Source of the DNA: Ostrea edulis
Lineage: Eukaryota
Assembly (NCBI RefSeq): GCF_947568905.1
Contig: NC_079167.1
Location: 19,902,001 to 19,966,000, forward strand
DNA: 64,000 nt
Direction of reading: 5' to 3'
The position numbers and the translations under genes were made by a program. Shown here piece by piece: positions 28,916 through 59,314 of the stretch. The notes below the pieces were generated by a model. The model had not been told where the DNA came from, made no database searches, and saw only the letters and a list, made by a program, of their open reading frames with translations. The stretch's first letter is position 1, and each line of letters begins with the position of its first letter.

Positions 28916-29080
28916 GATCTTGACCATTAATGATATAATTTTTGAATTATATCATTAGTGGACGGTAGGGTAGTATGCTAATGGTATAATTATATCATTA
29001 GTGGTCAGGATCCTGACCACTAATGTAACTTTATATCATTAGTGGGTATTGTAGCATTAATGGTTACTACACACATTTTC

Positions 29081-30428: not shown

Positions 30429-30444
30429 ACTTCCGGTGCACGTG
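30429..30444 (+). promoter_or_regulatory. TBL3 proximal promoter motifs: ETS site plus E-box
   Basis: ACTTCCGGT (ETS/GABP-type) and CACGTG 50-65 nt upstream of the inferred ATG, as is typical of housekeeping promoters. Confidence 0.5.
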
Positions 30445-30494
30445 TTGTACAGAATGATGTACAGGAAAGAAAGCTGATAGTCTTATATGAAGTC

Positions 30495-38220: not shown

Positions 38221-38256
<36 letters not shown>

Positions 38257-39313: not shown

Positions 39314-39350
<37 letters not shown>

Positions 39351-42300
39351 AGTACTGTGTCCATTGATCTAACACAGCACTGTTCTGTTATTTTAGGACA
39401 ATACTGTAATCTAATGCAATGCTCTTCTGTTATTTTTGGACAATACCGTAATCTAACACAGTGCTGTTCTGTTATTTTAGGACAACACTGTAAGGGTGTG
39501 GAAGTTTGACCCAGATTCTGGACGGGTCACCTGTGTCGGCGTGGGCCATGGTCACACTCACATTGTGGGCACTGTAGCAATCTCCAGGTGGGTTTTTATG
39601 AATTTCTTTCTTTATTTTTAACTTCTCCATTAAATGTAAATAAAAATTTGTTCTATTGTACATTATAGCTGTATATTGCCATACAAATGAAAGTCCCATT
39701 CAACTGAATATTTTTGTCACATGACACGTTGCAATATACAAGCTTCTGTGGTAGTGTCTCTGTAAGGTAAAGAAAACAATGCACAAGCTATCCATTTGTT
39801 GCTATGCTTTATAATATTTATCCACCTGTTACTATACTACATAATATTTATCCATCTGTTGCTATGCTCTATAATATATATCCAAGTGTTGCTATGCTAT
39901 ATAATATTTATGCACCTGTTGCTATGCTATCTATTATTTATCCATCTGTTGCTATGCTATATAATATTTATCCATCTGTTGCTATGTTATATAATATTTA
40001 TCCACCTGTAACTATACTATATAATATTTATCCACCTGTTGCTATGCTATATAATATTTATCCGTCTGTTACTATGCTATATGATATATATCCAAGTGTT
40101 GCTATGCTATACAATATTTATGCACCTGTTGCTATGCTATATAATTTTTATCCATCTGTTGCAATGCCATATAATATTTATCCTCCTTTAACTATACTAT
40201 ATAATATTTATCCACCTGTTGCTATACTATACAATATTTATCCACCTGTTGCTATGTCATATGATATTTATCCATATGTTACTATGCTATAATATATATC
40301 CATCTGTTTCTATGCTATATATTTATCCACCTGTTATTATACTCTATAATATTTATCCACCTGTAACTATTCTGCATAATATTTATTCATCTGTAGCTAT
40401 GCTATATAATATTCATCCATCTGATGCAATGCCATATAATATTTATCCACATGTTGCTATGCTATATAATATTTATCCACCTGTTGCTATGCTATATGAT
40501 ATTTATTCACCTGTTACCATGCTATATTGTATTTATCCCTCTTCACTTGGATATGATCTCTATCCAATGGCCTCTCAGATACAGTGTATATGATATCTCT
40601 GTGACAGTGAATAAGAAATTATCGGTTTACCTACAGTTATCAGCAGGCTGGATTATCTCTGGTTTATGATATCTATCTTTATTATATACCCATCAATATT
40701 TTGTTTTTTGATACTTTGGATTTAGCAGTGTAATCCAGTTTTCCGGATCACCACACTGTGGTTTTCTGATTCCGTATTAGTATCCTCTGAAACTGATGAT
40801 GTCACAATGCATCAACGCAACGTTTTTTGTGGAAAATATTGACCGCGTCACAAACAAAACTGTGTACACAAAACATAATTTCACTGTATATCTGTGGTTT
40901 GATAATTTGGAGTTATATTTATTATCTTATAAATGTGGATTTAAAATGCATAAGGGAGTATATAATAAATTTATCATTACTACTGTAGTTTGATCCAAAG
41001 AGTTGGATCACGTCTTGTTGACAGGCGCGGATCATCAGATCAAACTCAACGTTACTGTAGTAATTATATATATGTATGTTTATCTACAGGTTATCGGCAG
41101 CCTGGATTATCAGTGGGGGCCAGGACTTTACCTTGAAGAAATGGAAGCTTCCCCAAATGTTGGATGAATCATCTGCTGATCTGAAGTGTACACATACAGA
41201 GAGGGTTCATGAAAAAGACATCAATTGTGTGGTGGTATCCCCTAACGATAAATACCTAGCAACAGGGTCACATGATCGCACTGCAAAGGTAATACTGTTT
41301 TTTTCATTGACAGAACTCTCGCGATGATTCATGTACTGCAGTTGTTGTGTTACATTGTGATTTGTAAGTTTTTGTCTCTGAGACAGAATTTGACATAATC
41401 TTGGAAATAAGCATCTTTTTCTCTGTGTTTAGCTGTGGAATGCAGACACTTTTTCTCTGGTTGGAGTGATGAAGGGCCACAAACGAGGAGTCTGGTGTGT
41501 CCAGTTTTCACCTGTAGACCAGGTCAGGATTTGAAATATAGATAAGGGGTCACTGTCGGGTAATGGTCAGTTTGATGCTTAATTGTGGTACAGTCTTCGA
41601 TCCAATCCAGAAGATAGGCATCCAAAATGCAAAAGATTGCAGGTTATTTCCTGGAGATTTTTTATTGACATCTTTTTGACATACTGCAACAGTGTATGGA
41701 GGAATTAAAATAGCCAAATTCTTTTTTTTTCAGTTGAAAATGACAATATTTACACATCTAAGATTTATCTTTGTGGCAATTGTTTCCATTCAGTTTGATT
41801 GTAATATGTGTATCTTTTATAATGATCTTCAATTTGTAACCTGTAGATGTATGTCAGTATATTTACAAAATAGTAAATTCAAACCATTTTATGGCCATCA
41901 CTATGTTGGCATACAGTCAAGATAAGTCAAATGACTTAGTAGAAATAACATAATAAATACAGCAGGTCTCTTGATTCTTTAAAATCAATAAATTTGTTTT
42001 CTGTGCATAAAACAAATGAACATTTTGGAGTGTTGCAATCACATGGGTTAACTTGAATGGGATCAGTACCACATTTTAAATTGAAAGTTTATCATAAAGT
42101 AATTTATTAATTACATTTTGATACTTAAAAGGAATAATTTTATAGTGATACTTATTCTTTGAAGAGATGAAAAAAAGAAAAGAATGATAGAAAAGGCACA
42201 TAAAGAATCTGATCGGTGTTTCACCCTCAGCAACTAATTTTGGCATAGTAATAGCCAGGGTGTATTGCATCACCCATATTTATAACCCCTTATTTGGGAA

Positions 42301-45300
42301 TTGGGAGGCCAAAGAAACAGAGAGAGAGAGAGAACAAACACAAGTCAATGATTAACATGGATCTGTGCTTAATCGGGTAAATCAAAGTAATATTGGGTTT
42401 GGTTTCCATTAGAAATGGCATTTTGTTATCATTTCAAATTTTGGTTATAGTGAGGGGATTTAAGAGATTTTTGACTTTTATGGAGAGACATATTTGGATG
42501 CTCAATTCCAGGGGGTTTCCCATCTTGGGAGATATGCTTTGATAACAGCTGCTAGTATTTGTTTATGTTTGCTTTTTTGTTCATTTCAGTGTATTGCCAC
42601 TTCCTCGGGAGATGGAACAATTAAAATCTGGTCTATACAGGGCTTAGAATGTCTCAAGGTTTGAATGAATAATGACATTAAGTAGACTTTTTTGAAGAGG
42701 AATATAAGAGAACTCTAAATAGACTTTAAAGATGAATAAAAGAGAACTCATTTAATAGTTCCAGAGAAATCATAGTTATAATACACAAGATGAATAAACC
42801 AGAACTCACTAGTTCCAGAGAACTTGCAGAGTCATGATACACATATAATTTATAGATCATGATGCTGTGCCTTTGATATGTTGGCTAGTTTTCATTAAAA
42901 GTTTTGAATTGTCGTTGTAGACTTTTGAGGGACATGATTGTGCAGTGCTTAGGGTGACATTCATCAATAGAGGCATGCAGCTCGTCTCATGGTGAGTAGA
43001 GTTTTTTCAACTGAATCATGAAATCTAAACCAAAACTTGTAGAGCAAATGATTATCAAATTGCTAAAGTGTTGAAAGTTACATATATCTGTACATATACA
43101 TTGTAGATGTTATTCCATAGTACTGTGGATGGGGTCATTAGATTTCGTGTACATGTTTTTCATGGGTACCTATGTTCTACAAATTTCAAACCACAATGAA
43201 ATACATAATTTGTACACTTATTTTACTGTACAGAAACCATATCAATGAAATTACATCTCAAGGAAACTGTAAAATCTCCACAATCTATGAAAATTTGGTC
43301 CCCATGAATTTAAATGATTCGATAGTATTTTTCCTTTTGAATGTTTAGAAACACTGAAGGTACAAGGTTTTTTTCGGTGAGTTTACATACAGTGTATTTT
43401 GTTTTGTACAGTGGATCAGACGGTCTTGTCAAGCTCTGGGGGATAAAGTCCAGCACTTGTATGTCTACAATGGACGAACACGAGGACAAAGTCTGGTCCA
43501 TCACTGTCAACAAAGAGGAGGATCGCATAGCAACAGGAGGAGCGGACTCCAGCATTATACTCTGGAAGGTACGTATCCTGCTAGACATGTGTCACATGAC
43601 CAGTATTGATGTCACATGATTTCCAATGAAATGTTATCTGTAGTTTATTGAGGCAGCAAGTTAAGCCCTAATATTTAGTACTGTGATAATGTTAGTGACA
43701 CGGAGTTTGACTTGTAGGAAGTAGTTTTCTGTAAAATTCAACTGAAAGAAAAATAACACAATTTTGATAGTTGAAGTTTAAGTAGTTGTTCCAAATTAGA
43801 AAGAAAACTGTTTTGGGATACATGTACAATGTGTGTTTAATTATGTACATGTACACTTTGTATGTATGTATATGTACACTGAGTGTGTATATGATGTACA
43901 CGGTATGTATGTATATGTACACTGAGTGTGTTTATGATGTACACGGTATGTATGTATATGTACACTGAGTGTGTATAGGATGTACACTTTGTATGTATGT
44001 ATATGTACACTGAGTGTGTATAGGATGTACATGGTATGTATGTATATGTACACTGAGTGTGTATAGGATGTACATGGTATGTATGTATATGTACACTGAG
44101 TGTGTATAGGATGTACACGGTATGTGTGTATATGTACACTGAGTGTGTATATGATGTACACGGTGTGTATGTACAGTGAAACTTCTCTAAACCGGCCGGC
44201 TCTCGGACCGGAAAAAACGGCCGGTTTAGAGGGATGGCCGGTATACCGAGAATTTAGCAATTATAGCCATTTTATCTCATTATTCACAAAGTAGGTACTG
44301 TTCACCTTGATCTGGTGATCTATGATCAATTATCGGTGGAGATTAAATTAGTCCGTTTGTACCTAAAGATAATTATGAATTACAAGAAATATTCTCGCTG
44401 AAATCATCTAATTTTAAACTGAAAATCTATAACAGGATACATAAAGAAAACACAGAGGCCTATTATTGGAATTCCTCTTACCTATAAAAACTCTGTTTAC
44501 ATTCATCGCTTATGTCATTAACAATTTTGTTTTGACGTTTTTAAAAAGTACAGTAGTAAATATGAAATTGTAATTTGAATATTTCTTTGGAATTTTAAGT
44601 CTATGGAAACCAAGAATATTAATCTATCTTTTAATAATTATCATTAACAGTCATGGGTTTGTTCTTTATTAACTACCGCTTATATCCATACGAAAGTATG
44701 GTGAAACAATATGGCGTTTGATATGATATTCATTCCATAATTTCCCAACTGTGTTTTACATTTTGTACAGAATTTGGAAGGGTCTCTTGGATTAGCTAAG
44801 TGTCAATTAACACCCTTGACAGCACAGGTAAACAATAGAAATTAAAGAGGCCACTAGTGTTTTTCACACCTCCAATGGATAATTTCATACCTGGCTGGTC
44901 AGTCAGTCAATTTGCACACCTGGAGGATCTTAATTAACCTTTGCCCAAGATTTTCTTGTCTTCAAAAAGTGGCCCCTATGTTAAGGGTAAATTACACATG
45001 TTTGTTAACAAATGTACTTTAAAAAGTGGCCGATGTCCGGTTTTCAGGGGTGGCCGGTTTTGTAAGACTTTCTTTGTAAGGAAATGTTAAGATTTCTGCC
45101 GGGACTTTGAAAATCGGCCGATATTCAGGGAGAACCGGTATTTTGAGGGGCCGGTTTGGAGAAGTTTCACTGTATATGTACACTGAGTGTGTATAGGATG
45201 TACATGGTATGTATGTATATGTACACTGAGTGTGTTTATGATGTACATGGTATGTATGTATATGTACACTGAGTGTGTTTATGATGTACACGGTATGTAT

Positions 45301-48300
45301 GTATATGTACACTGAGTGTGTATAGGATGTACACTTTGTATGTATGTATATGTACACTGAGTGTGTTTATGATGTACACGGTATGTATGTATATGTACAC
45401 TGAGTGTGTATAGGATGTACATGGTATGTATGTATATGTACACTGAGTGTGTATAGGATGTACACTTTGTATGTAAGTATATGTACACTGAGTGTGCTTA
45501 TGATGTACACGGTACGTCGGTACCTAATAAATTGTAATACACATTTTGATGCATCAGGATGTAACAGGAGAAGAGGTACAAAAGAAAGAATCAGAAAGAG
45601 AAGAATTCATCCTTAAGTAAGTTCTTACTGTCAGTCATCACTGAAGTTCTTACTACTCATTGTCACTCATTGCTGAAGATTCTCCTATTAAATTCGTTCA
45701 GTTCCAAGGGCAGTGACTCTCTGAATGACTGAAATGCATATTTGTTTCTTGTAGAGAACAAGAGCTCAGTAATCTACTGCAACAGAAGAAATACTTGAAG
45801 GCAATAGGCCTGGCTATCACCCTGGAACAGCCATTCAGGGTTCTCAACATTATCAAAGGTACGTCTTGGGTTTGGTACCAAAGTTCCTTCACCTTGGAGT
45901 GTTTCTTTGTTGCCACTGGGGGTATATGTTTCACAAACACATCTTGTTCTTTTTGTAGAAATTCTGTACCATCCAGATGGTAAAGCAGAACTGGAGAAGA
46001 CACTGCAGAAACTGAGACTTGATCAAATAGGTAAAAAAAATAAACATTAAGTATATTCCTAAATCTTCTGATTTCTCTTTTATTGGAAAAGAGAAGTAAA
46101 TTAACATGGCCCTGAAAATAGATTGTTCTTCACATGGGATAGTTTATGATTCGTCATGTGTGACAGGAAGTGGGTACCTCAGCATTGTGGGAGTTACCAG
46201 GTTGGAATCCTTGTTCACATGACTTTTTTAACTCTCCCATTACAGTTTGGAACCTAGCAATAAACTGTTTTAATTGTGCAATGATTTGAGCAATGCTTTT
46301 TCAATAAATAGATGTTTTGTGTGATCTATTTTTAGATTCGGTGCTGCGGTTTTCTGGTGAATGGAACACCAACAGCAGACATTGTCATGAGGCACAGTTT
46401 GTTCTCAACACTGTGTTAAAGACGTATCCTCAGGACGAAATCCTCAAGTTTCCCAACATTAAGTCCACTATGGAGTCTCTCATCCCCTACACAGGTATAG
46501 TTTAATTCTCCTCCTCCCATTTACACTGAGAACTACATAATAGAGTTAAAGGATCATATTTTAGTACCTTTAATATTTTAATTTTGATCATCGTCAACTG
46601 AATTTCTAACTACTAGGACATTCACTTGACAGGGACCATTGTCCAGCTTTTGAGTTACTGTATCAGACAGAAGTTCATTGTTGTCTGTGTTGTTGTGTAG
46701 CTTAGTTGTTTTTTACAGAGCGTCACTTCCAGAGGATGAACCGACTTCTACAGCAAGCAATGTTCCTGGAGTTTACCTGGAGTTGCATGCGGAGGGCCAC
46801 CGACAGTGCACGGTCAGTACACAAAGCAGGTCATCACACACACTCAGTACACAAAGCAGGTCATCACACTCAGTACACAAAGCAGGTCAACACACACTCA
46901 GTACACAAAGCAGGTCAACACACACTCAGTATACAAAGCAGTTCATCACACACTCAGTACACAAAGCAGGTCATCACACACTCAATACACAAAGCAGGTC
47001 ATCACACACTCAATACACAAAGCAGGTCATCACACACACTCAGTACACAAAACAGGTCATCACACACTCAGTACACAAAGCAGGTCATCACACACTCAGT
47101 ACACAAAGCAGGTCATCACACTCAGTATACAAAGCAATTCATCACACACTCAGTACACAAAGCAGGTCAACACACACTCAGTACACAAAACAGGTCATCA
47201 CACACACTCAGTATACAAAGCAGGTCATCACACACTCAGTACACAAAGCAGGTCATCACACTCAGTATACAAAGCAATTCATTACACACTCAGTACACAA
47301 AGCAGGTCATCACACACTCAATACACAAAGCAGGTCATCACAAAAGCACGGTCATTTAATTATACCTGTAATTAAACATATTTGTCCTGCAGATCAGCAG
47401 AAAATTCTCGCCAAGTCACAACACTAAATGAAGAAGAACAATTGAACATCCAAGAGCCTCATGACATGGAGTGGGGAGATAAGCCATGTAGTGATGACTC
47501 AGATTCTGTGAATTCTGGAGACAAACTGAACGCAGTGAGTGATGATGACATTTCAGAAAATGAAACAGATCAAGATGTTTCTGAATCTATGGATGCTGAA
47601 AATTCTGAACAGTCATCTTGTGATTCTAACCAACCTGAATCTGACATTGAGAATGTTAAACCTGATGAAGGGAAAGACCCTGAAACAACATCATCACATA
47701 ACACCGATTCTGAGGAATCTTCTGAATCTAGTCTGGATGTACCTCCCAGTTCAACTGTTCGAATTACGAGGGTAAGACATGTAAATATCTACATGATTAT
47801 GTGCAGTCAAACTTTATTACATTGTATCTTTAACTTCATGGGGCCCAAAAAAACTTCCAATATATCCAAGGGTTGGAGATATTGAAGTTAAGATACTTAA
47901 AGAAAATGTAGTTGGGACTTTCAACTGACTTCAACATGTCCATAGTATTTGATATATCAATGTTGGAGATACCTTTATTTCTCTACTAAAATTACCATAT
48001 GATCCAAAATAATTGGGCTTTATGGTCATTCCAGGAGTCTATCACATTTCAGCCAAATACATGTATAGATAAAAGAGCAGTGGAGAACAGTTTAGTTTCT
48101 TGTGACAGATGCTTTAGGGATTAAGAACTCTCTAAATCAACTAGCCTGTAATGATATTTACAAGCCTGTCAAAAAGAGTATCCCCTCCTGGAGAAAATGT
48201 AACATGATAATAACAGGAAATGAATTACGTTGTGTAAATGTTGATTCTAATCCCATGCTTTGTACTTGAACCACCTTACTATTATAGTTACAGGTTTATT

Positions 48301-48843
48301 CCCCCTTCCCCGGATGGTTTTTATCACCCTTGTACACTTGAAAACAATTTCATCCCTATATAAAGTTGCCCAGACACAGCTGTGTTAAAGAGCAATTATC
48401 AACTAATATGAATTCACCCAGTCTTAAATTTGCTCACTCACATCGAAGGTGAAGGTGCAAAAATGAAAAAAAAAAAGGGGGGGTAAATATATATTGCACA
48501 CTTGAAATGTAGCTATAGTACCATATAAATATTTCAGGGAAAGGACAAATTAACCCAACAACTTAAAGAAACTAACAGGGTGAAAAGGTTACAGCAAAAA
48601 ACCAGTTTGAGTGTGGAAGAGAACACAACAACAAAAAAACAGCAGACTGTGAAGGTGACAGCGAACAGGAAAAGGTCGGAGCAAATGAAGCGTGACGCTG
48701 AGGAACAGCCGGTACCTGAACAGAAACGTGTGAGGAGGTCAGTGACAAGACAGAAAGCCAGTGTCACTGAGGAAGTAACAGACAGTGTTAACAAACTGAA
48801 ACCTCTAACAAGGTCAAGGCTACAGAAGCAGAAAGGGAGATAA
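30495..48843 (+). CDS. TBL3: Transducin beta-like protein 3 (UTP13, SSU processome WD40 protein), 24 coding exons, ~1019 aa
   Basis: Phase-consistent GT-AG exons: 30495-30514, 31629-31680, 32240-32335, 33046-33093, 33674-33751, 34481-34629, 35022-35192, 35423-35498, 36872-36971, 37231-37433, 37875-38075, 39481-39587, 41090-41288, 41433-41522, 42590-42658, 42921-42991, 43412-43568, 45558-45616, 45755-45858, 45959-46030, 46336-46494, 46719-46812, 47393-47771, 48538-48843 (3060 nt). Hallmarks: MSQLKESFAVETKYEPIFTGGK, LDIQFLGPNDSHLVVATNS, GHKRGVWCVQFSPVDQ, WNTNSRHCHEAQ, YTERHFQRMNRL (Utp13 domain). Confidence 0.95.
31727..31997 (-). mobile_element. SINE in TBL3 intron 2
   Basis: (gatt)n tail followed by ...aatttaggcctatgctctgcgcttatggcc...; same family as the copies at 4231 and 11355. 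Confidence 0.8.
34745..34990. repeat. Degenerate ~36-40-bp tandem repeat in TBL3 intron 6
   Basis: Recurrent ttgtgtgaaagttttcagttaaacag, about 6 times. Confidence 0.8.
35545..36738 (+). repeat. Exon-8-junction-derived repeat: degenerate ~41-bp units, then a homogeneous 35-36-bp array (19 units, 36051-36720)
   Basis: Unit gtgtatgaggtagatcaggtaagtatgtgatacct, compared with the real junction tccatacctgtgtttgag|gtaggtca. Confidence 0.93.
38151..39348 (+). mobile_element. Helentron/HINE-type element with ~4 monomers of a ~166-180-bp Cg170-like satellite and a nested LINE 3' tail (38341-38575)
   Basis: Subterminal inverted repeats gctcatctgag / ctcaggtgagc, terminal hairpin ggcccatgggcc, then tcttgtt; monomers aaaatcttcttctcaagaaccactgggccag...aagcttcctgacatagtgcagattcaag. 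The Cg170 resemblance is from memory. Confidence 0.8.
39369..39494 (+). repeat. 42-bp triplication of the exon-12 acceptor junction
   Basis: ctaacacag(c/t)actgttctgttattttaggacaa(t/c)actgtaa three times; the third copy is the real acceptor. Confidence 0.85.
39790..40545. repeat. 30-bp tandem minisatellite, ~25 copies, TBL3 intron 12
   Basis: Unit atttatccacctgttgctatgctatataat. Confidence 0.95.
43842..45512. repeat. 43-bp tandem minisatellite in TBL3 intron 17, split by a Tc1/mariner-type MITE
   Basis: Unit gtacactgagtgtgtataggatgtacacggtatgtatgtatat on both sides of 44174-45172. Confidence 0.95.
44174..45172. mobile_element. 999-bp non-autonomous Tc1/mariner (pogo-like) element with TA TSD
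   Basis: 24-bp TIR cagtgaaacttctc(t/c)aaaccggcc (23/24 match); TA at 44172-44173 and 45173-45174. Confidence 0.9.
46813..47350. repeat. 26-30-bp tandem minisatellite filling TBL3 intron 22, ~19 copies
   Basis: Unit cagtacacaaagcaggtcatcacacact, starting at the donor GT. Confidence 0.95.
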
Positions 48844-48882
48844 CTGTTAAATGGATTTTATGAATTGAATGAATTCTAAAAT

Positions 48883-48888
48883 AATAAA
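48883..48888 (+). terminator. Candidate TBL3 polyadenylation signal
   Basis: AATAAA 40 nt after the stop codon. Confidence 0.4.
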
Positions 48889-49173
48889 TATGTATTTAAG
48901 GAATTAACAATTATTTTAGTTACAAAAAAATCTAAGTTTGGAAATTCCCCGAGATCATTCCAAGGAGATATTTTGCATTTATGGTCAAGAAAACTTCTCT
49001 AACCTACCAAAAATATATCAGATTCTACAGTGTGTATTAGAAAATGTTCTACATATATACACTTGATTAACTGCATTAAGTTTTTATATGGATATTAAAG
49101 TTTAAATACAAAGTTTTGAGACTTTATTTGATAGATAGATAGATGGACTGATCACTGTGCACAAGTACGTCTG

Positions 49174-49301
49174 TTTTTATTACGTCACAATAAATTGATC
49201 AACTTATCAGAATCAAAATCAGTAAAAATGTGAGACTTTTCCCACATTTTTACTGATTTTGATTCTGATAAGTTGATCAATTTATTGTGACATAATAAAA
49301 A
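49174..49301. repeat. Near-perfect 128-bp hairpin (59-bp arms, one mismatch, 10-nt loop)
   Basis: tttttattacgtcacaataaattgatc...aaaaatgtg, loop agacttttcc, cacatttttact...gtgacataataaaaa. Confidence 0.95.
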
Positions 49302-49365
49302 CCGTCGCGACTTAAAAAACCCATGACATCACAATTTAAAAAAAAGAGCTGTAATCAGAGCAATC

Positions 49366-49482
49366 ATGGCAAGATTCGCTAGCACTACCGATGCAGATAT
49401 TGAACAACTGTTAGAAGATAGAAATAGGAAGAACACAAACCATGTTATCTCGATGTCAGTAAAAATAATTCGGAGCTACCTA
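49366..49482 (+). pseudogene. Crypton/DUF3504-like tyrosine-recombinase protein N-terminus, truncated at the arm-2 breakpoint
   Basis: MARFASTTDADIEQLLEDRNRKNTNHVISMSVKIIRSYL fits the RFA...I..LL....KNT N-terminal pattern of Crypton-derived proteins (recognised from memory). Confidence 0.45.
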
Positions 49483-49610
49483 ACGTTTATGCTGCATTAC
49501 CGTGATGAGCATGGTGTCTAAATATTTCACCAACAGTCAATTGTTCTTAGCCAGTCGTGCGGTAAACTCAGATTACTGGTAATCTGAAACAAAAAAATAA
49601 AATACTGTAC

Positions 49611-49630
49611 CCCTCTTTCAGTTGTGACAT
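49611..49630 (-). pseudogene. Duplicated TBL3 coding exon 1 (ATG TCA CAA CTG AAA GAG GG|GT) with promoter copy at 50140-50155
   Basis: Reverse complement of 30495-30514 with one substitution and an intact GT donor; CACGTG and ACCGGAAGT retained upstream. Confidence 0.85.
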
Positions 49631-49672
49631 GACTTCATATAAGACTATCAGCTTTCTTTCATGTACATCATT

Positions 49673-50121
49673 CAATCTCTACCCAGAGTTATCGTTCCTT
49701 ACACTCACTTACACCCCTGTAAACGTCTCGGGGGGGGTTTTACAAGATTTTTGTAAAATGGCACATATGATCAAATAAAGTATGGTTTTGACTTCAGTTA
49801 CAAAAATATACGTAAATAAATAAATATTGAGCAGATGTCAAGTCTTTTTGTGACACAAGAAGCATTGATTTGGGTTGAAACGTAGATATTTGGTAGTTCT
49901 ATTGCACCAGGCCTATACATAGGTACATGAAGAATATATAGTAATGGAAAAAAAATATACAAATAGTTGCTTGTCCTACATTTTCCAGATATTTTATAAA
50001 ATAGTTCTTAGTTTTATTAGCCGTAAAAAAGTGGATTTACATGTGGAATAAAATTGCTTATTTTGAGACGTTAACAGAGGTGTAAGTGAGAGCAAGGAAC
50101 GACAACTCTGGGTAGAGATTG
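49673..50121. mobile_element. 449-bp MITE with ~55-bp TIR, CAATCT...AGATTG termini and 10-bp TSD; arm 2 only
   Basis: TSD gtacatcatt / gtatatcatt; empty site in arm 1 at ~30450-30465. Confidence 0.88.
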
Positions 50122-51000
50122 GTATATCATTCTGTACAACACGTGCACCGGAAGTTTCCAAACATTTCCAAAGGGCACTAACTCTGTATTATCAATTAGG
50201 GGGGGGGGGGGTGCAGACGAATGATTGAAAGAAAACTGAGAAAAAGTTATAAAAAAGGATTATTTTTTTTTAAGCGAAAAAAGAAATTTCAAGAGAAAAA
50301 ATCTTTCAAAATGCGAAGAAAATAAATTTAAAGATCTATATTAAAACCATTTCAAGAAACTTCTATGAGAAAAACTGTATCGATCTTTAATATCAAATTC
50401 ATCTCGCACATGAATATAAATATCTGGGAATTATTTGCACTTGTAACGGTAAACTTGGATATGCAGCTGAACAGCTATCTGACACAGGCATAAGAAGTAA
50501 CGGATACAACTACACCCACCCACCCCACCCTCTGGCTTTTTTTTTTTTTTTTTGCTGCCGCTGCGATGTGTGGATTCAATCGAAATACACACAGGCAACA
50601 AATAAAATGTACTTAACACCGCCCTTGGCTATCTTGTCCTGTAAAGAGTGACAGGACTGAATTGTCACATTTTTCAAGAAATTTGATATAAATAAAATGA
50701 TTGTGCAGGAGATCGCCCGTTTGCACCACAGGGGCTAGCTAAGCCCGTTTTGGGTCCCCCCCCCCCCCCCCCCCCCCAAGTGGTTGAGTAAATCAACAAA
50801 ATTAAACCAGTTAGGCCTATATAGAGTAATTGTGGAAAAAACCCAAGTTGCTGTCTTTTAAAAAAGGGCTGCAATGCGTGGACCATAGACATGTCTTTCT
50901 AACAGAAACTTGATATTCTAGGGTGAAAATGTGTGTAGTAACCATTAATGCTACAATATCCACTAATGATATAAAGTTACATTAGTGGTCAGGATCCTGA

Positions 51001-51149
51001 CAATCTGATTAAAATAAGATCTTTGATCCGCTCCGTTATTCCAATCTGATTAAAATAAGATCTTTGATCCGCTCCGTTATTGTTATGTCGCTACACAAAG
51101 CGACATAACAATAACGGAGCGGATCAAAGATCTTATTTTAATCAGATTG
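51001..51149. mobile_element. Foldback MITE (108-bp palindrome plus 41-bp duplicated left arm) with 9-bp TSD GGATCCTGA; arm 2 only
   Basis: TSD at 50992-51000 and 51150-51158; same family as 16412-16512; empty site at 28996-29025. Confidence 0.88.
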
Positions 51150-52381
51150 GGATCCTGACTACTAATGATATAATTATACCATTAGCATACTACCCTACCG
51201 TCCACTAATGATATAATTCAAAGATTATATCATTAATGGTCAAGATCCACGTCCACTAATGATATAAATAAGTACCCTCTTGGCCACTAATGATGTAAAT
51301 AAGTACCCTCTTGGCTACTAATGATGTAAATAAGTACCCTCTTGGCCACTAATGATGTAAATAAGTACCCTCTTGGCCACTAATGATGTAAATAAGTACC
51401 CTCTTGGCCACTAATGATATAAAATCTGAGATTCCAAAAGTGGATGGTTTTGCAGCAACAACTATAGAAGTAATTTTCCATCATATATACACGCATGTGT
51501 GCGTTGGTGTGTGCTTTAGAACATATCAAAGTCTGATGGCTAGCCCGAACAAGTGTTACACTAATGTTTTCTTTTAATATGACATAATGAACAAAAGGCA
51601 TTCAATTTTGTAAGATCAGTAAATACGTCCACGGGCCTTATGTCTCACCTGAGCAGCTAATAATTATGTTGTCAAGAAGCATTGGTTAAGACAATTTGAA
51701 CAAATGTAAACGTTACATTTTAATGACACACACACACATCTTGTCATATGTCATACAAAAATGGTGATTTTTGCTCCTTTTATATTCATTAAATACTTGG
51801 AAAGTTTTGTTTATAGTGCCCGCCTCGAGTACACCATTTGTTAACTTTTAGATGAATGTGCTGACGTCATAATGCTTCACAGTATTAGAGTGAGAATGAG
51901 GACAATCAAGAGGTATAACAGTTAGAAAACAAATTTAATCCACATTAGAACACCATGAACATACATAATACGTTTGTAAAGTACCAACATATCAGAACAC
52001 CATGAACATACATAATACGTTTGTAAAGTACCAACATATCAGAACACCATGATCATACATAATACGTTTGTAAAGTACCAACATATCAGAACACCATGAT
52101 CATACATAATACGTTTGTAAAGTACCAATATATCAGAACACCATGAACATACATAATACGTTTGTAAAGTACCAACATATCAGAACACCATGAACATACA
52201 TAATACGTTTGTAAAGTACCAACATATCAGAACACCATGATCATACATGTAATACGTTTGTAAAGTACCAACATATCAGAACACCACGAACATGCACATA
52301 CATATAATACGTTTGTAAAATGCAAAAAATCCTTTAAAATCATGTTTCTATCTCCATAATTTTCAGAATGTCTATTTTTTT

Positions 52382-53263
52382 TTAAAATCCAAGAAATCTG
52401 AGAATGCGATCCCTCCATGTTCTCCGCGATCTCGCCACACGGGGTTCTTCCGCAGGAGAAAGCCCCGTGGTGCAGAGGAAACTACTCGGTAAAGGCCTTG
52501 GTTTCATGGGTTTGGTCTTCTCTTCTTTGTTCTTGGTGGAATCCTGGGTATCTGGTGCAAGTTTAAAGGTTTCTATACTGGATAGAAACAGCTTTCGGGG
52601 AATAAACTTGGGTATATTCCCTGTTTCTAATGCAGTAAGCTCTCCGGGTTTGTCCAATCCACTTTTGGATGGCTTGGTTTTCTGTTTTAATTCTTGTAAT
52701 TTAACAGGTTTCTGTAGACACTCATTTTTCATTTCCTGACTCGCATCTGAAGTGTTCACATGTTTTGTTTCTACCATAACTCTGCCGTCATCCTGGTCTA
52801 GTTTCTGGGATGTTGTATCTTGGAGATCTATTGCACATGCCTTTTCGACAATGCTCAGGATATATGCTGCGACATCCTCTGTTTTCATCTCAAGTTCTTC
52901 GCCACTGATCTCAGAAACAGAATGTGTGATTCGTCCGTTCTTTGCATAATTCAGTATTGCCCGTCCGCTCTCGATGGTTGTCTTGTCTTCTGATTCTTTC
53001 TCCAGCACTGCCTCTCCAGTCTCCATGCTTGCCTCAAACACATTTCTCTTCTTTATTTTCTTCGGCATGTGTAACTGCACGAAATATTCATCGTCAGCCC
53101 ATGACGGCAGGAATGAAGAGACATTTGCATTTGCAGCTTTTAAAACTTCAATTTTCGAGATGGTGTCCTTAACCTGTTCATAAGGTACAAAGTCATTTTC
53201 CAAATCCTTGTTGTCTGCCATAGAACGGGAAACTTTTACAGAAATCATCTTTTGATTTTCCAT
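52382..53263 (-). CDS. Intronless uncharacterised protein, copy 2 (293 aa from ATG)
   Basis: Paralog of 26878-27765: 11 amino-acid substitutions, and a stop two codons earlier (ends RFLGF). Confidence 0.7.
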   Translation of the reverse strand: MENQKMISVKVSRSMADNKDLENDFVPYEQVKDTISKIEVLKAANANVSSFLPSWADDEYFVQLHMPKKIKKRNVFEASMETGEAVLEKESEDKTTIESGRAILNYAKNGRITHSVSEISGEELEMKTEDVAAYILSIVEKACAIDLQDTTSQKLDQDDGRVMVETKHVNTSDASQEMKNECLQKPVKLQELKQKTKPSKSGLDKPGELTALETGNIPKFIPRKLFLSSIETFKLAPDTQDSTKNKEEKTKPMKPRPLPSSFLCTTGLSPAEEPRVARSRRTWRDRILRFLGF

Positions 53264-54004
53264 TTGCGTTACTTTTATCGAACGTATCGCCTCCAAGCAA
53301 GCGCACAGTATTGTTTATGTTTAGTCGCAAGGGTGAATGTGTTACGTATTACACATTATGACGTGCTGTACATTGTGACGTTATAATATTCAATGACGCT
53401 TAGATATTCTCTGAAAGAAGAGCATACACTTTCTCTCCCCCAACATTTTCTAGATCCGCGCCTGTATATATATATAGGGGTGGGGAAAGGGGGAGGGGGT
53501 TACAGCCGTATTTTATTACTATTTCTGTCCAAGTTGTAATACAATGAATCCCGAGAATTTTAGAAGTAATCTAGGGAAGAAAAACAGACACCTGGAGAGA
53601 TCATGTGATGTTATAAATATAATCAGGCGCGTTGTATTGCATCGTTTATTGTAAGGGGGCAGTCAGAGAAGAAGTTGGTTTTACATTTGTCTGAAAATTC
53701 TTATCTTACAAAATTTAGAAATGAAATCAAACCTTTAAATCCTAAGTTTTTGGGGTAGGGGATAATGGTTGATCGTTTTTTTCAATTCATCGGTTTTAAA
53801 TTTCCACTACATTATCTCTGTTTATCACAATGTGTCGAGTTTGTAATAAGCTTCCAACCTGGACACTGTTTAGTTTGGGAACAGGACTCGCAACAAACAC
53901 ACCGAATACAGCATGAGGTACTTGTGTTTTAATAGTCAAGGTTGCTAACATTAGAACATTTTATTTTCCAATCAAGGGCCCTCAAATACATACAAATAAT
54001 GTAC

Positions 54005-54342
54005 TATAGGATTAAACATTCTTTTGGAAGAATTTATCGATGTGTAAACTCCGGACATTTTACTCACAAACTGAATAAAAGTGCGAAGCACTTTTATGTT
54101 AAGTTTGTGAGTAAAATATCCGGAGTTTACACATCGATAAATTCTTCCAAAAGAATGTTTGATTCTTATAATTCCAATTCATTGACTTTATTAACAATTG
54201 CAAAAATTTGAATAGTTACCCGCACTATGTTGTTTGTTTTCAGGCGTGTATGAATACATCGCGTTTTCGGATTTATTGATGTGTAAACTCTTGTTCAGCT
54301 TTATTTTTGTCCAATCAAAACAATTGTAATAAATAAGATTGG

Positions 54343-54350
<8 letters not shown>
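54005..54350. mobile_element. Arm-2-only insertion: ~165-bp palindrome plus a 184-bp element with tataattccaat TIRs
   Basis: 54014-54084 and 54088-54160 are near-perfect inverted arms; absent at the arm-1 site (~26060-26072). Confidence 0.75.
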
Positions 54351-54387
<37 letters not shown>

Positions 54388-54472
54388 AGTAAAGAAAGAA
54401 GTGATTACATAACACATAGTTATATACAAATACAGTGTCATATATTGTTCAAAATAAATTTTCCAGTTATAT

Positions 54473-54770
54473 TTAGAATAGATGGCTCTTCAGAACATAG
54501 TATGTAAATGAATTTTTGTTCATCATTGAGTTTGGTAAAAAAAAATTAACTGTTTTTTCTATAGCACCACAAAAAGATTTTCTTTCATCAACAAACTTTT
54601 CACATTTAATCAAAAAATGAATCGCATCACCTAATAAACCGGAGTTGCATTTGTTACATATTCCTTCATTCCTAGTAATACCAGAATATCTACCAACTTC
54701 AATCATTAATTTATGAGCTGATATCCGTAACTTACAAATAGATCTTCTAATATAAAAAAATAACAAGAAC
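54473..54770 (-). mobile_element. Non-LTR retrotransposon 3' fragment, arm-2 copy
   Basis: RRSICKLRISAHKLMIEVGRYSGITRNEGICNKC...HFLIKC. Confidence 0.75.
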
Positions 54771-55397
54771 TTGTATGTTTTTCTGAGTGAAAGGTGTTGA
54801 CAAAGGCATGGTGCATTTTACGAAAAACCGTTGTGAACTTTCCAAAACTTTAAGGCCAAACAAGGTAAATAACCGTCAAACAGTTTGAGTGGATAAGATG
54901 CTATGTATTCCAGTAGCAAATTGCTATAATGGTGAATCAATGTTATCAGGTGCATGTACTTCGAATTACATGCACATGTATGTTGAATTTTATTAATGCG
55001 CAATAAACTTCCCATATTTTGTTTTGAGGTCAGAGTTATGTACAGTTGCCAACTGTTGGTTGTAGTCGAATTATGATACATAGAGTGTACATGTAAGAGC
55101 TTTTAGACTGTAGTAGTACAGAATATTAAATATTTGATACACTCGTAACATGTATAACCATATACATTGTATCTGATACTCAGGGGGAAAAAAGACAATT
55201 TAATTTTCAAAAATTATGTTTAGACTACATGTATATTGTATTGACACTAAAATGTATTAGGCTTGCCCCTAGTACTGGGGAATCCTACAGGTATTTAAAA
55301 GGCAAATACGCCATGATTAGGGAACATTCCCGCTTAAGTGTAACACTCTCTTTTAATTAATTAGATTGCAACTTATGTCTTCTGGGTTTTTTCTTTG

Positions 55398-55440
<43 letters not shown>

Positions 55441-55913
55441 GTTTTGTTTTTGTCTATATGCTGCAAGTCTGTTTTTTAAAAATTACCACAATGTGTGGAA
55501 TTATCCGGACCAACTCTATTTCAAGACTTGTTCGTGTAGTTCAAAGACTAAGCAATGCAATTTCTCGTATTTTTTCAATCTCTGTTGGAGCGATTTCAAA
55601 GTCGATCTTTAAGGGGCAGTGGAAAATGTATAGTATGTGTAGCATATACTATTTTCCTGTACATCTTGTTCGTAGTATCATTTACAAATCCGTAATAACC
55701 ACGCCGCGTATTCGAACACTAAAAACCGAATACTAAGAATCGGGTTGGACAATAAGAATCGGGTCAGGCACTAAGAAAGATTTGGGAAAAGTACACAATA
55801 TTCACTCCCCGCGATCGTATGTCGCGATGTTCACAACAGAAACGAATTGATCAATCATCTTAACTGTAACCGTGCTTTGCTCTAGCGATATCTTGAATGT
55901 TATAAGTGGATAT

Positions 55914-56047
55914 CAGGGGATGCTTACTCCTCCTAGGCACCTGATCCCACCTCTGGTGTGTCCAGGGGTCCGTGTTTGCCCAACTATCTATTTTGTATTG
56001 CTTGTAGGAGTTATGAGATTGATCACTGTTCGTTATCTTCACCTTGC
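55914..56047 (-). mobile_element. 134-bp fragment of a common oyster repeat; arm 2 only
   Basis: Reverse complement of the 63710-63860 family; replaces 3 nt (tag) of the arm-1 site at ~24527-24531. Confidence 0.8.
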
Positions 56048-57082
56048 ATGTACACAGCCGTTTTATTATCAGATGAATGAGAAGAATGTAAGCTCGCTTG
56101 AAAGCTATGAATTCAAAAATTGAATTGTAGTGAAGGATGACCTCCTTCCCCCAATTTAAGATATCGAAGACTGATGGAAAATTGAAGCAGTTAAAGCTGA
56201 TGAGGAACTTAAATCCCCCCTCCCCCCGCAATTTTTATTTGTTTTGCTTGTCAATAATCTTATACGAGTGAACTTCCTACTACTTCTAACACCACCACCA
56301 CCACCACCCCTCCCCTCACCCCCCCCCCCCCCCCGAAAAACGACTTGACATGCCAAGGTTGAATAAGATTTCCCATGAACATCTCCATAGGAGTGAAAGA
56401 TTCTCGAACGGGACGTTAAACAATATACCACGCTTTCGTTAGGCCTACCTGTCTACATGCAATATTTATGTAAATATATTTTTATCTTATTTATTCATTA
56501 ATCAAGATGCCTCAGGGGGCATATATAATTCTAACAGTTTTGTTTAAAAACATTATAACTACATGATACAATATACACATATGCACTATTTACATTCTAC
56601 ATTGACATATATGTATTGAATTGGCTCATCACAATACTGATTGAAAGTATGCTCTACAAGTGTGCTATATGGGAAGTAAAGTAAAACAATATTATAAAAT
56701 GTTTCACAAACACAGCGGGTATACCAAGGAGTGTTGCCTGAGCCAAGTCATTGAGACTGGCAGTCTTATACCCTAAGTGTTCGAGACAGCATATTTATAG
56801 TATATACAATTAAAAATAACCACACGTACCATATGAACACATGCATACCATATAAATAAATATATGTGAATATTCAAGCTATTTTATGGTCTGTATTTAA
56901 TAAATCGCATTTTAAAAGATTGATATTGAAATGGATAGAATATAAACTGTCTGTCAAATTGATAAGTAACCTTATATAGTAAAGTGTTTTTATATAAAAC
57001 GGCGCGAGTGCTACCATATTGATAATTTTGATATAAAAAAACCCATCAAACTTCCGCCAGAGTTCGTTTGCTTACTATTCGT

Positions 57083-57164
57083 TAGTCTGGTCCCCGCCCC
57101 CGCCACTCATTGATCATTCCCAATAAGGAATGATCAATGAGTGGCGGGGGCGGGGACCAGACTA
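57083..57164. promoter_or_regulatory. Perfect 38-bp-arm palindrome with GC boxes upstream of F-BAR/SH3 copy 2
   Basis: tagtctggtccccgcccccgccactcattgatcattcc, loop caataa, ggaatgatcaatgagtggcgggggcggggaccagacta. Confidence 0.55.
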
Positions 57165-57271
57165 CGACTGATCAATTTATGAGACTGACGTCATAGATAG
57201 TTCTACGTCATAATTATATTTTGTCACAATTAGTCAACTAGTGTTGCTGTTAACCCGATTGGCTGTTAACC

Positions 57272-58750
57272 ATGGCTGATACCATTGATTTTCATTTGGT
57301 AGAAGAAGCTATTAAGCAAAACAAACACACTATTTATCTACAGGAGGCTGTAGGTCGGATAATACAGATTCGCGCTGAAGCAAAATTAACCTATGTACAA
57401 GAGATTGAAAATTGGAGGAAAGGCTATCCAAATGAATTGCTTAAAAATGTTGGCGGCAATCTATTCCAATCACCCTCGTCTGGGGATGAAGACCCCTTGA
57501 CAGAAATTCATAGAAACATCTATGATAAACTCATGGCCAGTAGTGGCCCCTATCAGAAAGTCCTACAACACACCCGACTGGAAAAGGAAAGATTGACAGA
57601 AATAGAAGAAGAATTTAAATCGTACAACACACAGCGGGAAAATCTGGAAAACGCTCTCACGAAACAGAAGCACTCAATAGACAACATGAAAGCCCTTTTA
57701 ATCAAGTTGGAAGGAAAGCTTTCCAAGAACAGGAAAAGACAGTCTGCCAAGAGCGCGCGTAAGTTAGATTCCTGGAACACAGAGATGTCTGATATCCGAA
57801 AACACATTGAAACATGTTCTGCATTATGTATTGAAGATGAGGCAAAGTTACAGTCTTTAATCATTAGTAAGAAGAAAACCCTTCAGATGATGTTTCGGGA
57901 ACTCAAGGAATTAGACAAAAGCAGGTTTAGTAGGATTCCTGATGTGATTTTACAGTATGTGAAAAATATCGTTCCGCAATATGACCTCATTCGTAAAAAT
58001 GCACGTGAGGCATTTGAATGCTTCCAAAACCAACAAGAGATTGATATTCTTTCAATTCATAATCAGAACTGGATTCAAACAGAAGAAAGGGCTAGACTTA
58101 AGAAGGCGGGGCTCGGTACGGGGATTGATGTATTTTTAGTGACTAATCCTTCTGTGCACTCGGAGAATGTTAAAGAGGAGGGAACAAAGGCCAGTAAGAG
58201 ACAAATGGTCCCATCACATCCTTCTACACCCCATCGGCAGCAAAATCCACCACAGAAAAATAGCCCTCACAATGCCCAAAACACAACAGCCACGTCTCCC
58301 AATTATGATACAGTTCTGAGAAGCTCACTAATGATGAAATTACCCTCATCGTTAGTGACTGAATTTCATGAAGATGATGTAGAAACAATAAAACTACCAG
58401 GCGAATCATCTTGTCGTCTGCCAAGTCCATTCCCCGTCAAAGAATTTTGTGTTGATAAGGCAGAACCAACTAAGACAATTAAAGACAACGATCCCTGCAG
58501 AAAAGCAGGAGATTATTTAAAGATGAACGACGATATTGGTGGAATGCGTAACATCCGAGTTATTGCTACGACACGTTACAAAGCTCGAAGTAGCAAAGAA
58601 CTTGATCTTAAAAAAGGACAAGTTATAAAACAAACAATGGGAGTAATGGGAGGTACCGAGGAACGATTTGCGTATGGTTGGACGCGAAGAAATAGATTAT
58701 CAAGGAAACAGTATGGGTGGTACCCCATCAGCGTCGTGTCACGCAAGTAA
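57272..58750 (+). CDS. Intronless F-BAR + SH3 protein (divergent PACSIN/syndapin-like), 492 aa, copy 2
   Basis: Paralog of 21857-23338: 22 amino-acid substitutions and one in-frame codon deletion; SH3 core identical at the protein level. Confidence 0.85.
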   Translation: MADTIDFHLVEEAIKQNKHTIYLQEAVGRIIQIRAEAKLTYVQEIENWRKGYPNELLKNVGGNLFQSPSSGDEDPLTEIHRNIYDKLMASSGPYQKVLQHTRLEKERLTEIEEEFKSYNTQRENLENALTKQKHSIDNMKALLIKLEGKLSKNRKRQSAKSARKLDSWNTEMSDIRKHIETCSALCIEDEAKLQSLIISKKKTLQMMFRELKELDKSRFSRIPDVILQYVKNIVPQYDLIRKNAREAFECFQNQQEIDILSIHNQNWIQTEERARLKKAGLGTGIDVFLVTNPSVHSENVKEEGTKASKRQMVPSHPSTPHRQQNPPQKNSPHNAQNTTATSPNYDTVLRSSLMMKLPSSLVTEFHEDDVETIKLPGESSCRLPSPFPVKEFCVDKAEPTKTIKDNDPCRKAGDYLKMNDDIGGMRNIRVIATTRYKARSSKELDLKKGQVIKQTMGVMGGTEERFAYGWTRRNRLSRKQYGWYPISVVSRK

Positions 58751-59268
58751 AACTGCCACAGTTAAAATTCATGATAAAGTACATTGTATCTAAAATATAT
58801 TATATGAAAAAAAAAAAAAGTTTTTCAAGCATTGAAAGTTGTTATCACATGTTATTATTTTATTTAATACTTTTACTAATATGTATGTTGGAACACGAGG
58901 ACTTGATGCCGTAAAAAATAGCAAACAATGCTACATTTTAAAAGATAGTATCTTTTTTTACAATTGTTTTTAAACGGAGCAAGTCCCTATGGTCGGAGCA
59001 AGTCGTTATGGTAAAGTACTCGCATCGGAACAGAAACGGCGAGAAACCCAGTGGGAGCAGGAGGGGAAGATCATATATATTTGATTAATGACTTATAGGT
59101 GAGTACAAAAGCCTATTAGAAGCATTTGAAACGTTTTTCAACCCTTAATTGGCCCCCAGGGTGAAAATGAAATTCCTGAAACCACATTGCACATCTACAG
59201 GACACCATCAATCATCTTCCAAAAGATGATTTGTCTATTGGGTAAACTGTATGAGTTCTGGGAAACAG

Positions 59269-59314
<46 letters not shown>

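What the first reader, a model, noticed from the sequence alone, without database searches (positions are those of the whole stretch)
49483..50160. Copied TBL3 promoter and exon 1 point antisense into TBL3's own 3' end
Seen: TBL3's ATG exon (30495-30514, MSQLKES) and its ETS/E-box motifs lie in the last 220 bp of arm 1. Arm 2 therefore carries the same promoter (50140-50155) and exon 1 with an intact GT donor (49611-49630) on the minus strand, only ~0.8-1.3 kb from the TBL3 stop codon (48843). A 449-bp MITE now sits between the motifs and the ATG. Inference: an active copy of a housekeeping promoter would make a cis-antisense or chimeric transcript across TBL3's last exons, allowing transcriptional interference or dsRNA against a ribosome-biogenesis gene. 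The MITE or the 49174 hairpin may have dampened it.
Basis: partly seen in the sequence, partly recalled or inferred. Interest (0 to 1): 0.75.

Follow-up and report, generated by a model that had tools for sequence, protein, structure and literature searches.

The report
Silent duplicated TBL3 promoter relic
A recent 10-kb inverted duplication in the flat oyster left a spare copy of the TBL3 gene's start site pointing back at the gene's tail, but it is split by a mobile element and the available RNA data show no transcript from it, so it looks like an ordinary duplication by-product.

Summary
Arm 1 (20744-30647) and arm 2 (59859-49483) are a 9.9/10.4-kb inverted duplication with 2.5% substitutions. 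Arm 2's inner end holds an intact copy of the TBL3 ETS/E-box segment (50141-50156, minus strand). It also holds a 449-bp MITE (49673-50121) and a copy of the ATG exon with its GT donor (49630-49611).

I confirmed that the arm-1 exon really is TBL3's first exon. A 3401-nt spliced RNA contig ends at 49112 and carries the MITE-less 5' end, which corresponds to arm-1 position 30423. My 24-exon model predicts 3407 nt.

The functional reading is not supported. In the two RNA assemblies that could be laid, no contig lies on 49113-49610 or on 50165-50406. A DNA run covers every bin of the stretch and bridges the 49483 junction.

A transcript from the copy would also meet four AATAAA signals before reaching TBL3's 3' end: one in the MITE, two in the palindrome and one at 49128. 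It would carry ten upstream ATGs as well.

Best reading: a hitch-hiking, silent or nearly silent promoter and first-exon relic. Only assembled contigs from two RNA runs were available, so weak or tissue-specific activity is not excluded.

The parts
20744..30647 (+). Arm 1 of the inverted duplication. Its last 225 bp are the TBL3 start site, 5' UTR, exon 1 and the first 133 bp of intron 1.
   Evidence: blastn and the repeat finder; MAFFT of the two arms gives 2.5% substitutions
30423..30514 (+). TBL3 5' UTR and exon 1 (ATG at 30495, donor GT at 30515-30516). ETS-like ACTTCCGG at 30428-30435 and E-box CACGTG at 30438-30443 lie at the mRNA 5' end.
   Evidence: The 5' end is inferred from the X11 joint 49666->50126 (side 36, depth 101.2, equal to that of the 3401-nt TBL3 contig); sequence
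30423..49112 (+). TBL3/UTP13 gene: 24 coding exons, all introns GT-AG, 1021 codons, stop at 48843, 3' UTR to 49112.
   Evidence: Gene model; Pfam Utp13 PF08625 and WD40 on single exons; human TBL3 7mq8_LR 714-764; spliced RNA contigs in X1 and X11
49094..49112 (+). TBL3 poly(A) signal ATTAAA (49094-49099) and the mRNA 3' end.
   Evidence: The X11 contig ends at 49112 and an X1 contig reaches 49077; motif scan
49163..49313 (.). Near-perfect palindrome (about 65-nt arms) with AATAAA on both strands (plus strand 49189 and 49294; minus strand 49286 and 49181).
   Evidence: DNA fold -61.9 kcal/mol, z -18.3; motif scan; DNA depth about twice baseline
49366..49482 (+). Short ORF fragment cut off by the arm-2 boundary. 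It weakly resembles a tyrosine-recombinase core-binding domain.
   Evidence: the ORF listing; Pfam MrpR_N_CB E 0.05, below the curated cut-off
49483..49610 (-). Copy of the first 133 bp of TBL3 intron 1, shortened by a 5-bp indel; this is the inner end of arm 2.
   Evidence: blastn block 30452-30647 against 49673-49483; X8 DNA contigs 49262-49542 and 49513-49660 with 0 mismatches
49611..49672 (-). Copy of TBL3 exon 1 (ATG 49630-49628, exon end 49611, GT 49610-49609) and of the proximal 5' UTR. Sites that tell the arms apart: 49612 and 49661.
   Evidence: Sequence; arm alignment
49673..50121 (.). 449-bp MITE: 57-nt TIRs, 10-bp TSD (one mismatch), 34% GC, no long ORF, thousands of genomic copies. 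It carries AATAAA at 50018 on the minus strand.
   Evidence: DNA depth about 250,000 against a baseline of about 90 in X8
50122..50161 (-). Copy of the first ~39 nt of the TBL3 mRNA, including the ETS-like and E-box motifs (50156-50141). It is identical to arm 1.
   Evidence: Sequence; 0 substitutions in 59 aligned columns
50162..59859 (-). The rest of arm 2: a copy of the whole upstream region, including copies of the orphan ORF and the PACSIN-like gene.

Best explanation
The 49483-50160 segment is a passive relic. A recent inverted segmental duplication of about 9.9 kb copied the region upstream of TBL3. Its inner breakpoint fell 133 bp into TBL3 intron 1. The copy was placed tail-to-tail about 370 bp beyond TBL3's poly(A) site. 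The copy therefore includes the TBL3 start region and ATG exon only because they lay at the edge of the duplicated block.

After the duplication, a high-copy MITE with a 10-bp target-site duplication of the Mutator-like length class inserted about 39 nt downstream of the copied start site. The copy is now silent, or too weakly expressed to be assembled. It does not produce a detectable antisense or chimeric RNA over TBL3.

Shown: the structure, the real use of the arm-1 exon 1, the TBL3 3' end, and the lack of RNA contigs over the copy's unique flanks. Inferred: the direction of the duplication (arm 1 to arm 2), the timing of the MITE insertion, and silence in tissues that were not sampled.
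For: Structure.

The junction is real. X8 DNA contig 49262-49542 bridges 49483 with 0 mismatches at single-copy depth. Alleles of both arms are present in X8.

Arm 1 is the working promoter. The X11 3401-nt spliced contig (depth 101.2) covers 47392-47770 and 48537-49112. A joint of the same depth, 49666->50126, skips exactly the MITE plus one TSD copy. The same joined form is in DNA run X8, so it is the arm-1 sequence. My exon model from 30423 to 49112 gives 3407 nt.

No RNA from the copy. X11 depth is 0 in bins 49318-49559 and 50165-50406, and 0.56 in 49197-49317. X1 has nothing between 49078 and 49674. DNA run X8 covers all 30 bins, so no filter is hiding this region. The X11 depth in bin 49560-49680 (74.8) is accounted for by the arm-1 mRNA piece plus the MITE edges.

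The copy is badly placed to make a useful RNA. There are minus-strand AATAAA signals at 50018 (in the MITE), 49286, 49181 and 49128, all before TBL3's 3' end. There are ten ATGs upstream of the copied ATG, whose unspliced ORF is 20 codons.
Against: Only assembled contigs were available, from two RNA runs of unknown tissue, one of them very small. Contigs show presence, not absence. They carry no strand or start information.

An RNA that ends inside the MITE cannot be told from the thousands of other MITE copies.

A spliced RNA using the 49611 donor would differ from TBL3 mRNA at only two sites (49612, 49661). The tool did not list differences that close to a joint.

The copied core segment is intact: 0 substitutions in 59 columns, both CpGs of the motifs kept, and the full 9.7 kb of upstream sequence present. 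Nothing in the sequence rules out firing.
Confidence: 0.75

Rival explanations
1. The copied promoter fires at a low level, but its RNA is cut and polyadenylated early. This would happen in the MITE (AATAAA at 50018) or at the palindrome (49286, 49181), so the RNA never overlaps TBL3. The result is a short unstable non-coding RNA with no effect on TBL3.
For: The core segment is identical to the active arm-1 promoter and the whole upstream region is present. There are four canonical poly(A) signals in the right orientation before 49112. A trace depth of 0.56 is seen in X11 at 49197-49317.
Against: There is no RNA contig on the unique 49318-49610 stretch. A product that ends in the MITE cannot be tested with contigs because the MITE is multi-copy. 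The 0.56 trace may come from the second genomic copy of the palindrome.
Confidence: 0.15
2. One reading: the copy is an active promoter. Its transcript runs antisense across TBL3's 3' UTR and last exons, or splices from 49611 into them, and causes interference or dsRNA/siRNA against TBL3.
For: Convergent geometry, an intact GT donor and intact motifs. Antisense RNAs from duplicated gene fragments are known in molluscs (Lymnaea antiNOS RNAs, PMC3537157; survey in PMC2984423).
Against: The strand-blind X11 TBL3 contig (depth 101) ends exactly at the poly(A) site, 49112. An overlapping antisense RNA of appreciable level would have extended it. Depth is zero on 49318-49559 in both RNA runs. There are four AATAAA signals in the way. 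TBL3 mRNA is well expressed and normally spliced.
Confidence: 0.06
3. Arm 2 is an assembly artefact: a misplaced, inverted haplotype copy of arm 1.
For: Arm divergence of 2.5% is not far above oyster allelic diversity. In X8 the arm-2-type contig at 50168-50331 has depth 35, against 81 for the arm-1 type.
Against: A short-read contig from run X8 crosses the 49483 junction with 0 mismatches at depth 104 (baseline 77-100). A further contig, 49513-49660, carries the arm-2 alleles at depth 91. The arms also differ by many large indels and by the MITE.
Confidence: 0.03

Closest known systems
Partial gene duplicates (promoter and first-exon relics) at the edges of segmental duplications
   Same: A duplicated block ends inside a neighbouring gene, so only its promoter, first exon and part of intron 1 are copied. 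The fragment has no downstream exons and decays or is hit by transposons. This rests on established knowledge of segmental duplications; the structure itself is shown.
   Different: Here the copy landed in inverted orientation only 370 bp beyond the 3' end of the same gene. The geometry is convergent, whereas most such relics lie elsewhere in the genome.
Antisense RNAs from duplicated gene fragments in molluscs (Lymnaea NOS pseudogene antiNOS RNAs; PMC3537157, PMC2984423)
   Same: A duplicated, partly inverted piece of a gene that could give RNA complementary to the parent mRNA.
   Different: In Lymnaea the antisense RNA is shown to be transcribed and is complementary to coding sequence. Here the copied part is only 92 nt of mRNA. 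It lies in the sense orientation relative to its own promoter, and no transcript is seen. Any antisense effect would need read-through into TBL3's 3' end.
Convergent (tail-to-tail) cis-natural antisense transcript pairs
   Same: Two start sites face each other across a short gap.
   Different: The defining overlap of two transcripts is not observed. The TBL3 contig ends at 49112 and nothing is assembled beyond it.
Inverted-duplication hairpin-RNA and siRNA loci (the plant inverted-duplication model of MIRNA origin, PMC3237417; maize Mu killer, from my own knowledge)
   Same: An inverted duplication of part of a gene lying close to the gene.
   Different: Those loci work because both arms are transcribed into one fold-back RNA. 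Here only 225 nt of arm 1 lie within the TBL3 transcription unit. Their complement (49483-49673) lies beyond the poly(A) site and is not present in RNA.

Membership tests
Inverted segmental duplication | Two long copies of high identity in opposite orientation on one molecule | tested here: met
   9904 against 10377 bp, 2.5% substitutions, collinear blocks
Inverted segmental duplication | The junction with unique sequence is supported by data independent of the assembly | tested here: met
   X8 contig 49262-49542 has 0 mismatches at depth 104, and both allele sets are present. The outer junctions at 20744 and 59859 were not tested.
TBL3/UTP13 (small-subunit processome WD40 protein) | WD40 repeats followed by the Utp13-specific C-terminal domain | tested here: met
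   PF08625 on two exons (8.9e-16 and 1.9e-10), WD40 on four exons; human TBL3 residues 714-764. Exons were tested singly; the joined model was not searched.
MITE (non-autonomous DNA transposon; TSD in the Mutator-like length class) | Terminal inverted repeats, target-site duplication, small size without coding capacity, high copy number, and an empty site available for comparison | tested here: met
   57-nt TIRs (52/57), 10-bp TSD with one mismatch, 449 bp, longest ATG ORF 40 codons, depth about 250,000 against 90, empty site in arm 1. Superfamily assignment rests on TSD length only.
Cis-natural antisense transcript locus | An RNA transcribed from the opposite strand | tested here: not met
   No RNA contig in X1 or X11 on 49113-49610 or 50165-50406. 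Only contigs from two runs were available, so weak expression is not excluded.
Cis-natural antisense transcript locus | Overlap of the antisense RNA with the sense mRNA | tested here: not met
   The TBL3 contig ends at 49112 and is not extended by any overlapping RNA
Active promoter (duplicate of a housekeeping promoter) | Transcription start, open chromatin or H3K4me3 at the site | not testable with these tools
   No raw stranded reads, CAGE or chromatin data were on hand. Only sequence intactness is shown.
Hairpin-RNA / inverted-repeat siRNA locus | Both arms are contained in one transcript, and small RNAs are produced | tested here: inconclusive
   The arm-2 complement of the TBL3 5' end is absent from RNA contigs. 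No small-RNA data were available.

The most novel reading that the evidence does not exclude
The copied TBL3 promoter is active only in a tissue or stage that was not sampled, for example the germline or early embryo. Its RNA would read through the MITE and the palindrome into TBL3's 3' UTR and last exon. That would give a convergent sense/antisense pair that feeds siRNA or piRNA production, or transcriptional interference, against a ribosome-biogenesis gene. It would be a newly born self-antisense regulator, possibly polymorphic among oysters.
Probability: 0.07. Interest if true: 0.55.

Novelty: new member of a known kind. Interest (0 to 1): 0.2.

Why it matters
If the copy were active, it would be a clean and very young example of a gene gaining its own antisense promoter through one duplication step. 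It could be dated, and it comes with a natural MITE-insertion allele. As the evidence stands, it is mainly useful as annotation:
- It fixes the TBL3 start site (about 30423) and poly(A) site (49112).
- It shows that the inverted duplication is real.
- It warns gene predictors and read mappers that a decoy first exon with a good splice donor lies on the opposite strand just beyond the gene.

Tried and rejected
1. Assembly artefact: rejected, because a DNA contig from run X8 bridges 49483 and both allele sets are present.

2. Reading the joint 49666->50126 in RNA run X11 as splicing-out of the MITE from an arm-2 transcript: rejected. The ends are AT..AT. The joint removes exactly the MITE plus one TSD copy. 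The same joined form is in DNA run X8. Its depth equals that of the TBL3 mRNA contig, which lies on the other strand from arm 2.

3. Using the diagnostic sites 49612 and 49661 to assign the RNA to one arm: this failed. The tool lists no differences that close to a joint or piece end, and the arm-1-type DNA contig in X8 shows none either.

4. Looking for the rest of the truncated ORF (49366-49482) beyond arm 2's outer end, to show that arm 2 is an insertion: nothing recognisable was found at 59860 onward.

5. X12 turned out to be uninformative. Its one contig runs unspliced from 47388 to 47898 and may be DNA.

6. The exact-length check gave 3407 against 3401 nt. The 6-nt difference is unexplained. 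It could be an alternative NAGNAG-type site, a small indel in that individual, or the contig's 5' end.

7. I did not run the large protein searches, because gene identity was settled by the family scans.

Full report
**Observation**

The window comes from a flat-oyster chromosome, according to earlier notes of this scan.

blastn of the two regions and the repeat finder show a collinear inverted duplication. Arm 1 is 20744-30647 and arm 2 is 59859-49483. A MAFFT alignment of the arms gives 227 substitutions in 9067 aligned columns (2.5%). There are several large indels. The inner 1.4 kb is more diverged, at about 5%.

The innermost blocks are:
- 29914-30462 against 50657-50122
- 30452-30647 against 49673-49483 (95.4% identity, E 3e-85)

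Reading both strands confirms every coordinate of the finding:
- Arm 1 has ACTTCCGG at 30428-30435, CACGTG at 30438-30443, and an ATG exon at 30495-30514 followed by GT.
- Arm 2 has the same motifs on the minus strand at 50156-50141, the ATG at 49630, the exon end at 49611 and GT at 49610-49609. The exon carries one substitution.
- Between them lies a 449-bp insertion (49673-50121). It has 57-nt terminal inverted repeats (52/57), a 10-bp target-site duplication with one mismatch, and 34% GC. It occurs nowhere else in the window. Arm 1 shows the uninterrupted target site.

**Is the arm-1 exon really TBL3's first exon?**

I built the gene model from open segments and GT-AG sites. It has 24 coding exons, all introns GT-AG, 1021 codons, and a stop at 48843.

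Single exons, searched by reference, give these matches:
- The Utp13-specific domain, PF08625, on two exons (8.9e-16 and 1.9e-10), and WD40 repeats on others.
- Human TBL3 residues 714-764 in the processome structure 7mq8.
- Exon 3 aligns, weakly, to human TBL3 residues 34-60. The 24 residues of exons 1 and 2 therefore account for the whole N-terminus.

The joined protein was used only inside a script, to check the frame and length.

**RNA and DNA evidence (the single read-laying run; runs chosen)**

Run X11 is RNA. It has a 3401-nt contig of depth 101.2 that covers 47392-47770 and 48537-49112 with the intron removed. This places TBL3's 3' end at 49112, which is 18 nt after an ATTAAA at 49094.

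A joint of exactly the same depth, 49666->50126, skips the MITE plus one copy of the target-site duplication. It has 36 letters on its upstream side.

The same joined form is in DNA run X8, so it is simply the arm-1 sequence laid onto arm 2. It is the 5' end of the TBL3 mRNA, which corresponds to arm-1 position 30423. The ETS-like and E-box motifs therefore sit in the first 20 nt of the mRNA.

My model from 30423 to 49112 predicts 3407 nt, against 3401 observed. The contig is thus essentially the full-length mRNA. The small RNA run X1 independently shows the last splice (47770/48537) and 3' UTR out to 49077.

**Is the copy transcribed?**

In X11 the depth is 0 in bins 49318-49559 and 50165-50406, and 0.56 in 49197-49317. 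X1 has nothing between 49078 and 49674.

The X11 depth of 74.8 in bin 49560-49680 is what the arm-1 mRNA piece (56-63 nt at 101) plus the MITE edges would give.

DNA run X8 covers all 30 bins, so the empty RNA bins are not an effect of filtering.

The strand-blind TBL3 contig is not extended past 49112. An overlapping antisense RNA of appreciable abundance would have extended it.

There are limits to this evidence:
- These are contigs from two RNA runs of unknown tissue. They cannot show strand, starts or rare RNAs.
- An RNA ending inside the multi-copy MITE cannot be recognised.
- The two diagnostic sites in the exon copy (49612, 49661) were too close to piece ends to be reported.

**Reality of the structure**

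X8 has a contig, 49262-49542, that crosses the arm-2 boundary with no mismatch at depth 104 (baseline 77-100). A second contig, 49513-49660, carries arm-2 alleles at depth 91.

The 'other letters' that X8 shows at 50271, 50301, 50346 and 50856, and the small deletions at 50256-50263, are exactly the arm-1 alleles. Both copies therefore exist in that DNA.

MITE depth is about 250,000 against about 90, which means thousands of copies.

**What a transcript from the copy would meet (inference)**

Starting near 50161 on the minus strand, such a transcript would run into:
- the MITE after about 39 nt;
- AATAAA at 50018 inside the MITE;
- ten ATGs before the copied ATG, whose unspliced ORF is 20 codons;
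- AATAAA at 49286 and 49181 inside a near-perfect palindrome (fold -61.9 kcal/mol, z -18.3);
- AATAAA at 49128.

All of these lie before TBL3's 3' end. The palindrome carries AATAAA on both strands.

**Explanation**

The segment is most simply a hitch-hiking relic. The duplicated block holds two apparently intact genes in both arms: the PACSIN-like gene and an orphan ORF.

The block's inner breakpoint happened to fall 133 bp into TBL3 intron 1. Since TBL3 needs its exon 1 next to the gene body, arm 1 is the original and arm 2 the copy. The MITE, which is absent from arm 1, most likely inserted afterwards.

The 78 nt around the start site are identical between the arms. At 2.5-5% divergence this is only mildly unexpected, and I do not read it as constraint.

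I put 0.75 on a silent or near-silent relic, 0.15 on weak firing with early termination, 0.06 on a real antisense RNA over TBL3, and 0.03 on an artefact.

**Comparison with known cases**

The closest known kind is the partial gene duplicate left at the edge of a segmental duplication.

Known functional analogues all require a demonstrated transcript or a co-transcribed fold-back, and neither is seen here. They include:
- Lymnaea antiNOS RNAs from a NOS pseudogene (PMC3537157; survey in PMC2984423);
- convergent cis-NAT pairs;
- inverted-duplication hairpin loci (PMC3237417).

**Verdict**

The functional interpretation is not supported by the data that could be reached. Interest is low, at 0.2. 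The residual novel reading, tissue-specific self-antisense regulation of TBL3, has a probability of about 0.07.

Noticed in passing
window 49163-49313: Near-perfect palindrome 60 nt beyond TBL3's poly(A) site, with AATAAA on both strands. DNA depth is about twice baseline, so there are probably two copies in the genome. It could act as a two-way terminator between the convergent units.
   Followed up: partly
window 49366-49482: A 39-codon ORF start (extending to 51 codons by chance into arm 2) that weakly resembles a tyrosine-recombinase core-binding domain (Pfam E 0.05). It is cut off exactly at the arm-2 boundary. It may be the remnant of an element or gene into which arm 2 was inserted.
   Followed up: partly
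window 47393-48840: The oyster TBL3 has an acidic-then-basic C-terminal extension of about 227 residues (its last two exons). It has no Pfam match and lies beyond the Utp13-domain exons, the last TBL3-like part recognised; human TBL3 has 808 residues. It is present in spliced RNA contigs.
   Followed up: partly
window 40600-40669 and 41090-41130: Intron 12 holds a decoy copy of the start of exon 13 (reading ..LSAGWIISGL against ..LSAAWIISGG) next to a long minisatellite (about 39770-40590). This looks like a partial exon duplication inside the intron.
   Followed up: no
window 46814-47342, 45171-45514 and 43790-44180: A 28-bp minisatellite (19 copies) in intron 22 and 43-bp minisatellites in intron 17 give long spurious ORFs on both strands.
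   Followed up: no
window 50168-50331 and the joint 49666->50126, in DNA run X8: In X8 the arm-2-type contig has depth 35 and the arm-1-type contig 81. The MITE-less joined form has depth 47, about half of baseline. This hints at heterozygosity in or near the arms, or a polymorphic MITE insertion, in that individual.
   Followed up: no
window 30423-49112: The exon model gives an mRNA of 3407 nt but the RNA contig is 3401 nt. The 6-nt difference is unexplained.
   Followed up: no
window 29081-29342 and 29629-29913 (arm 1); 51002-51159 (arm 2): The inner 1.6 kb of the arms differs by several insertions or tandem-array length changes of 150-290 bp. Its substitution rate (about 5%) is twice that of the rest of the arms.
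   Followed up: no
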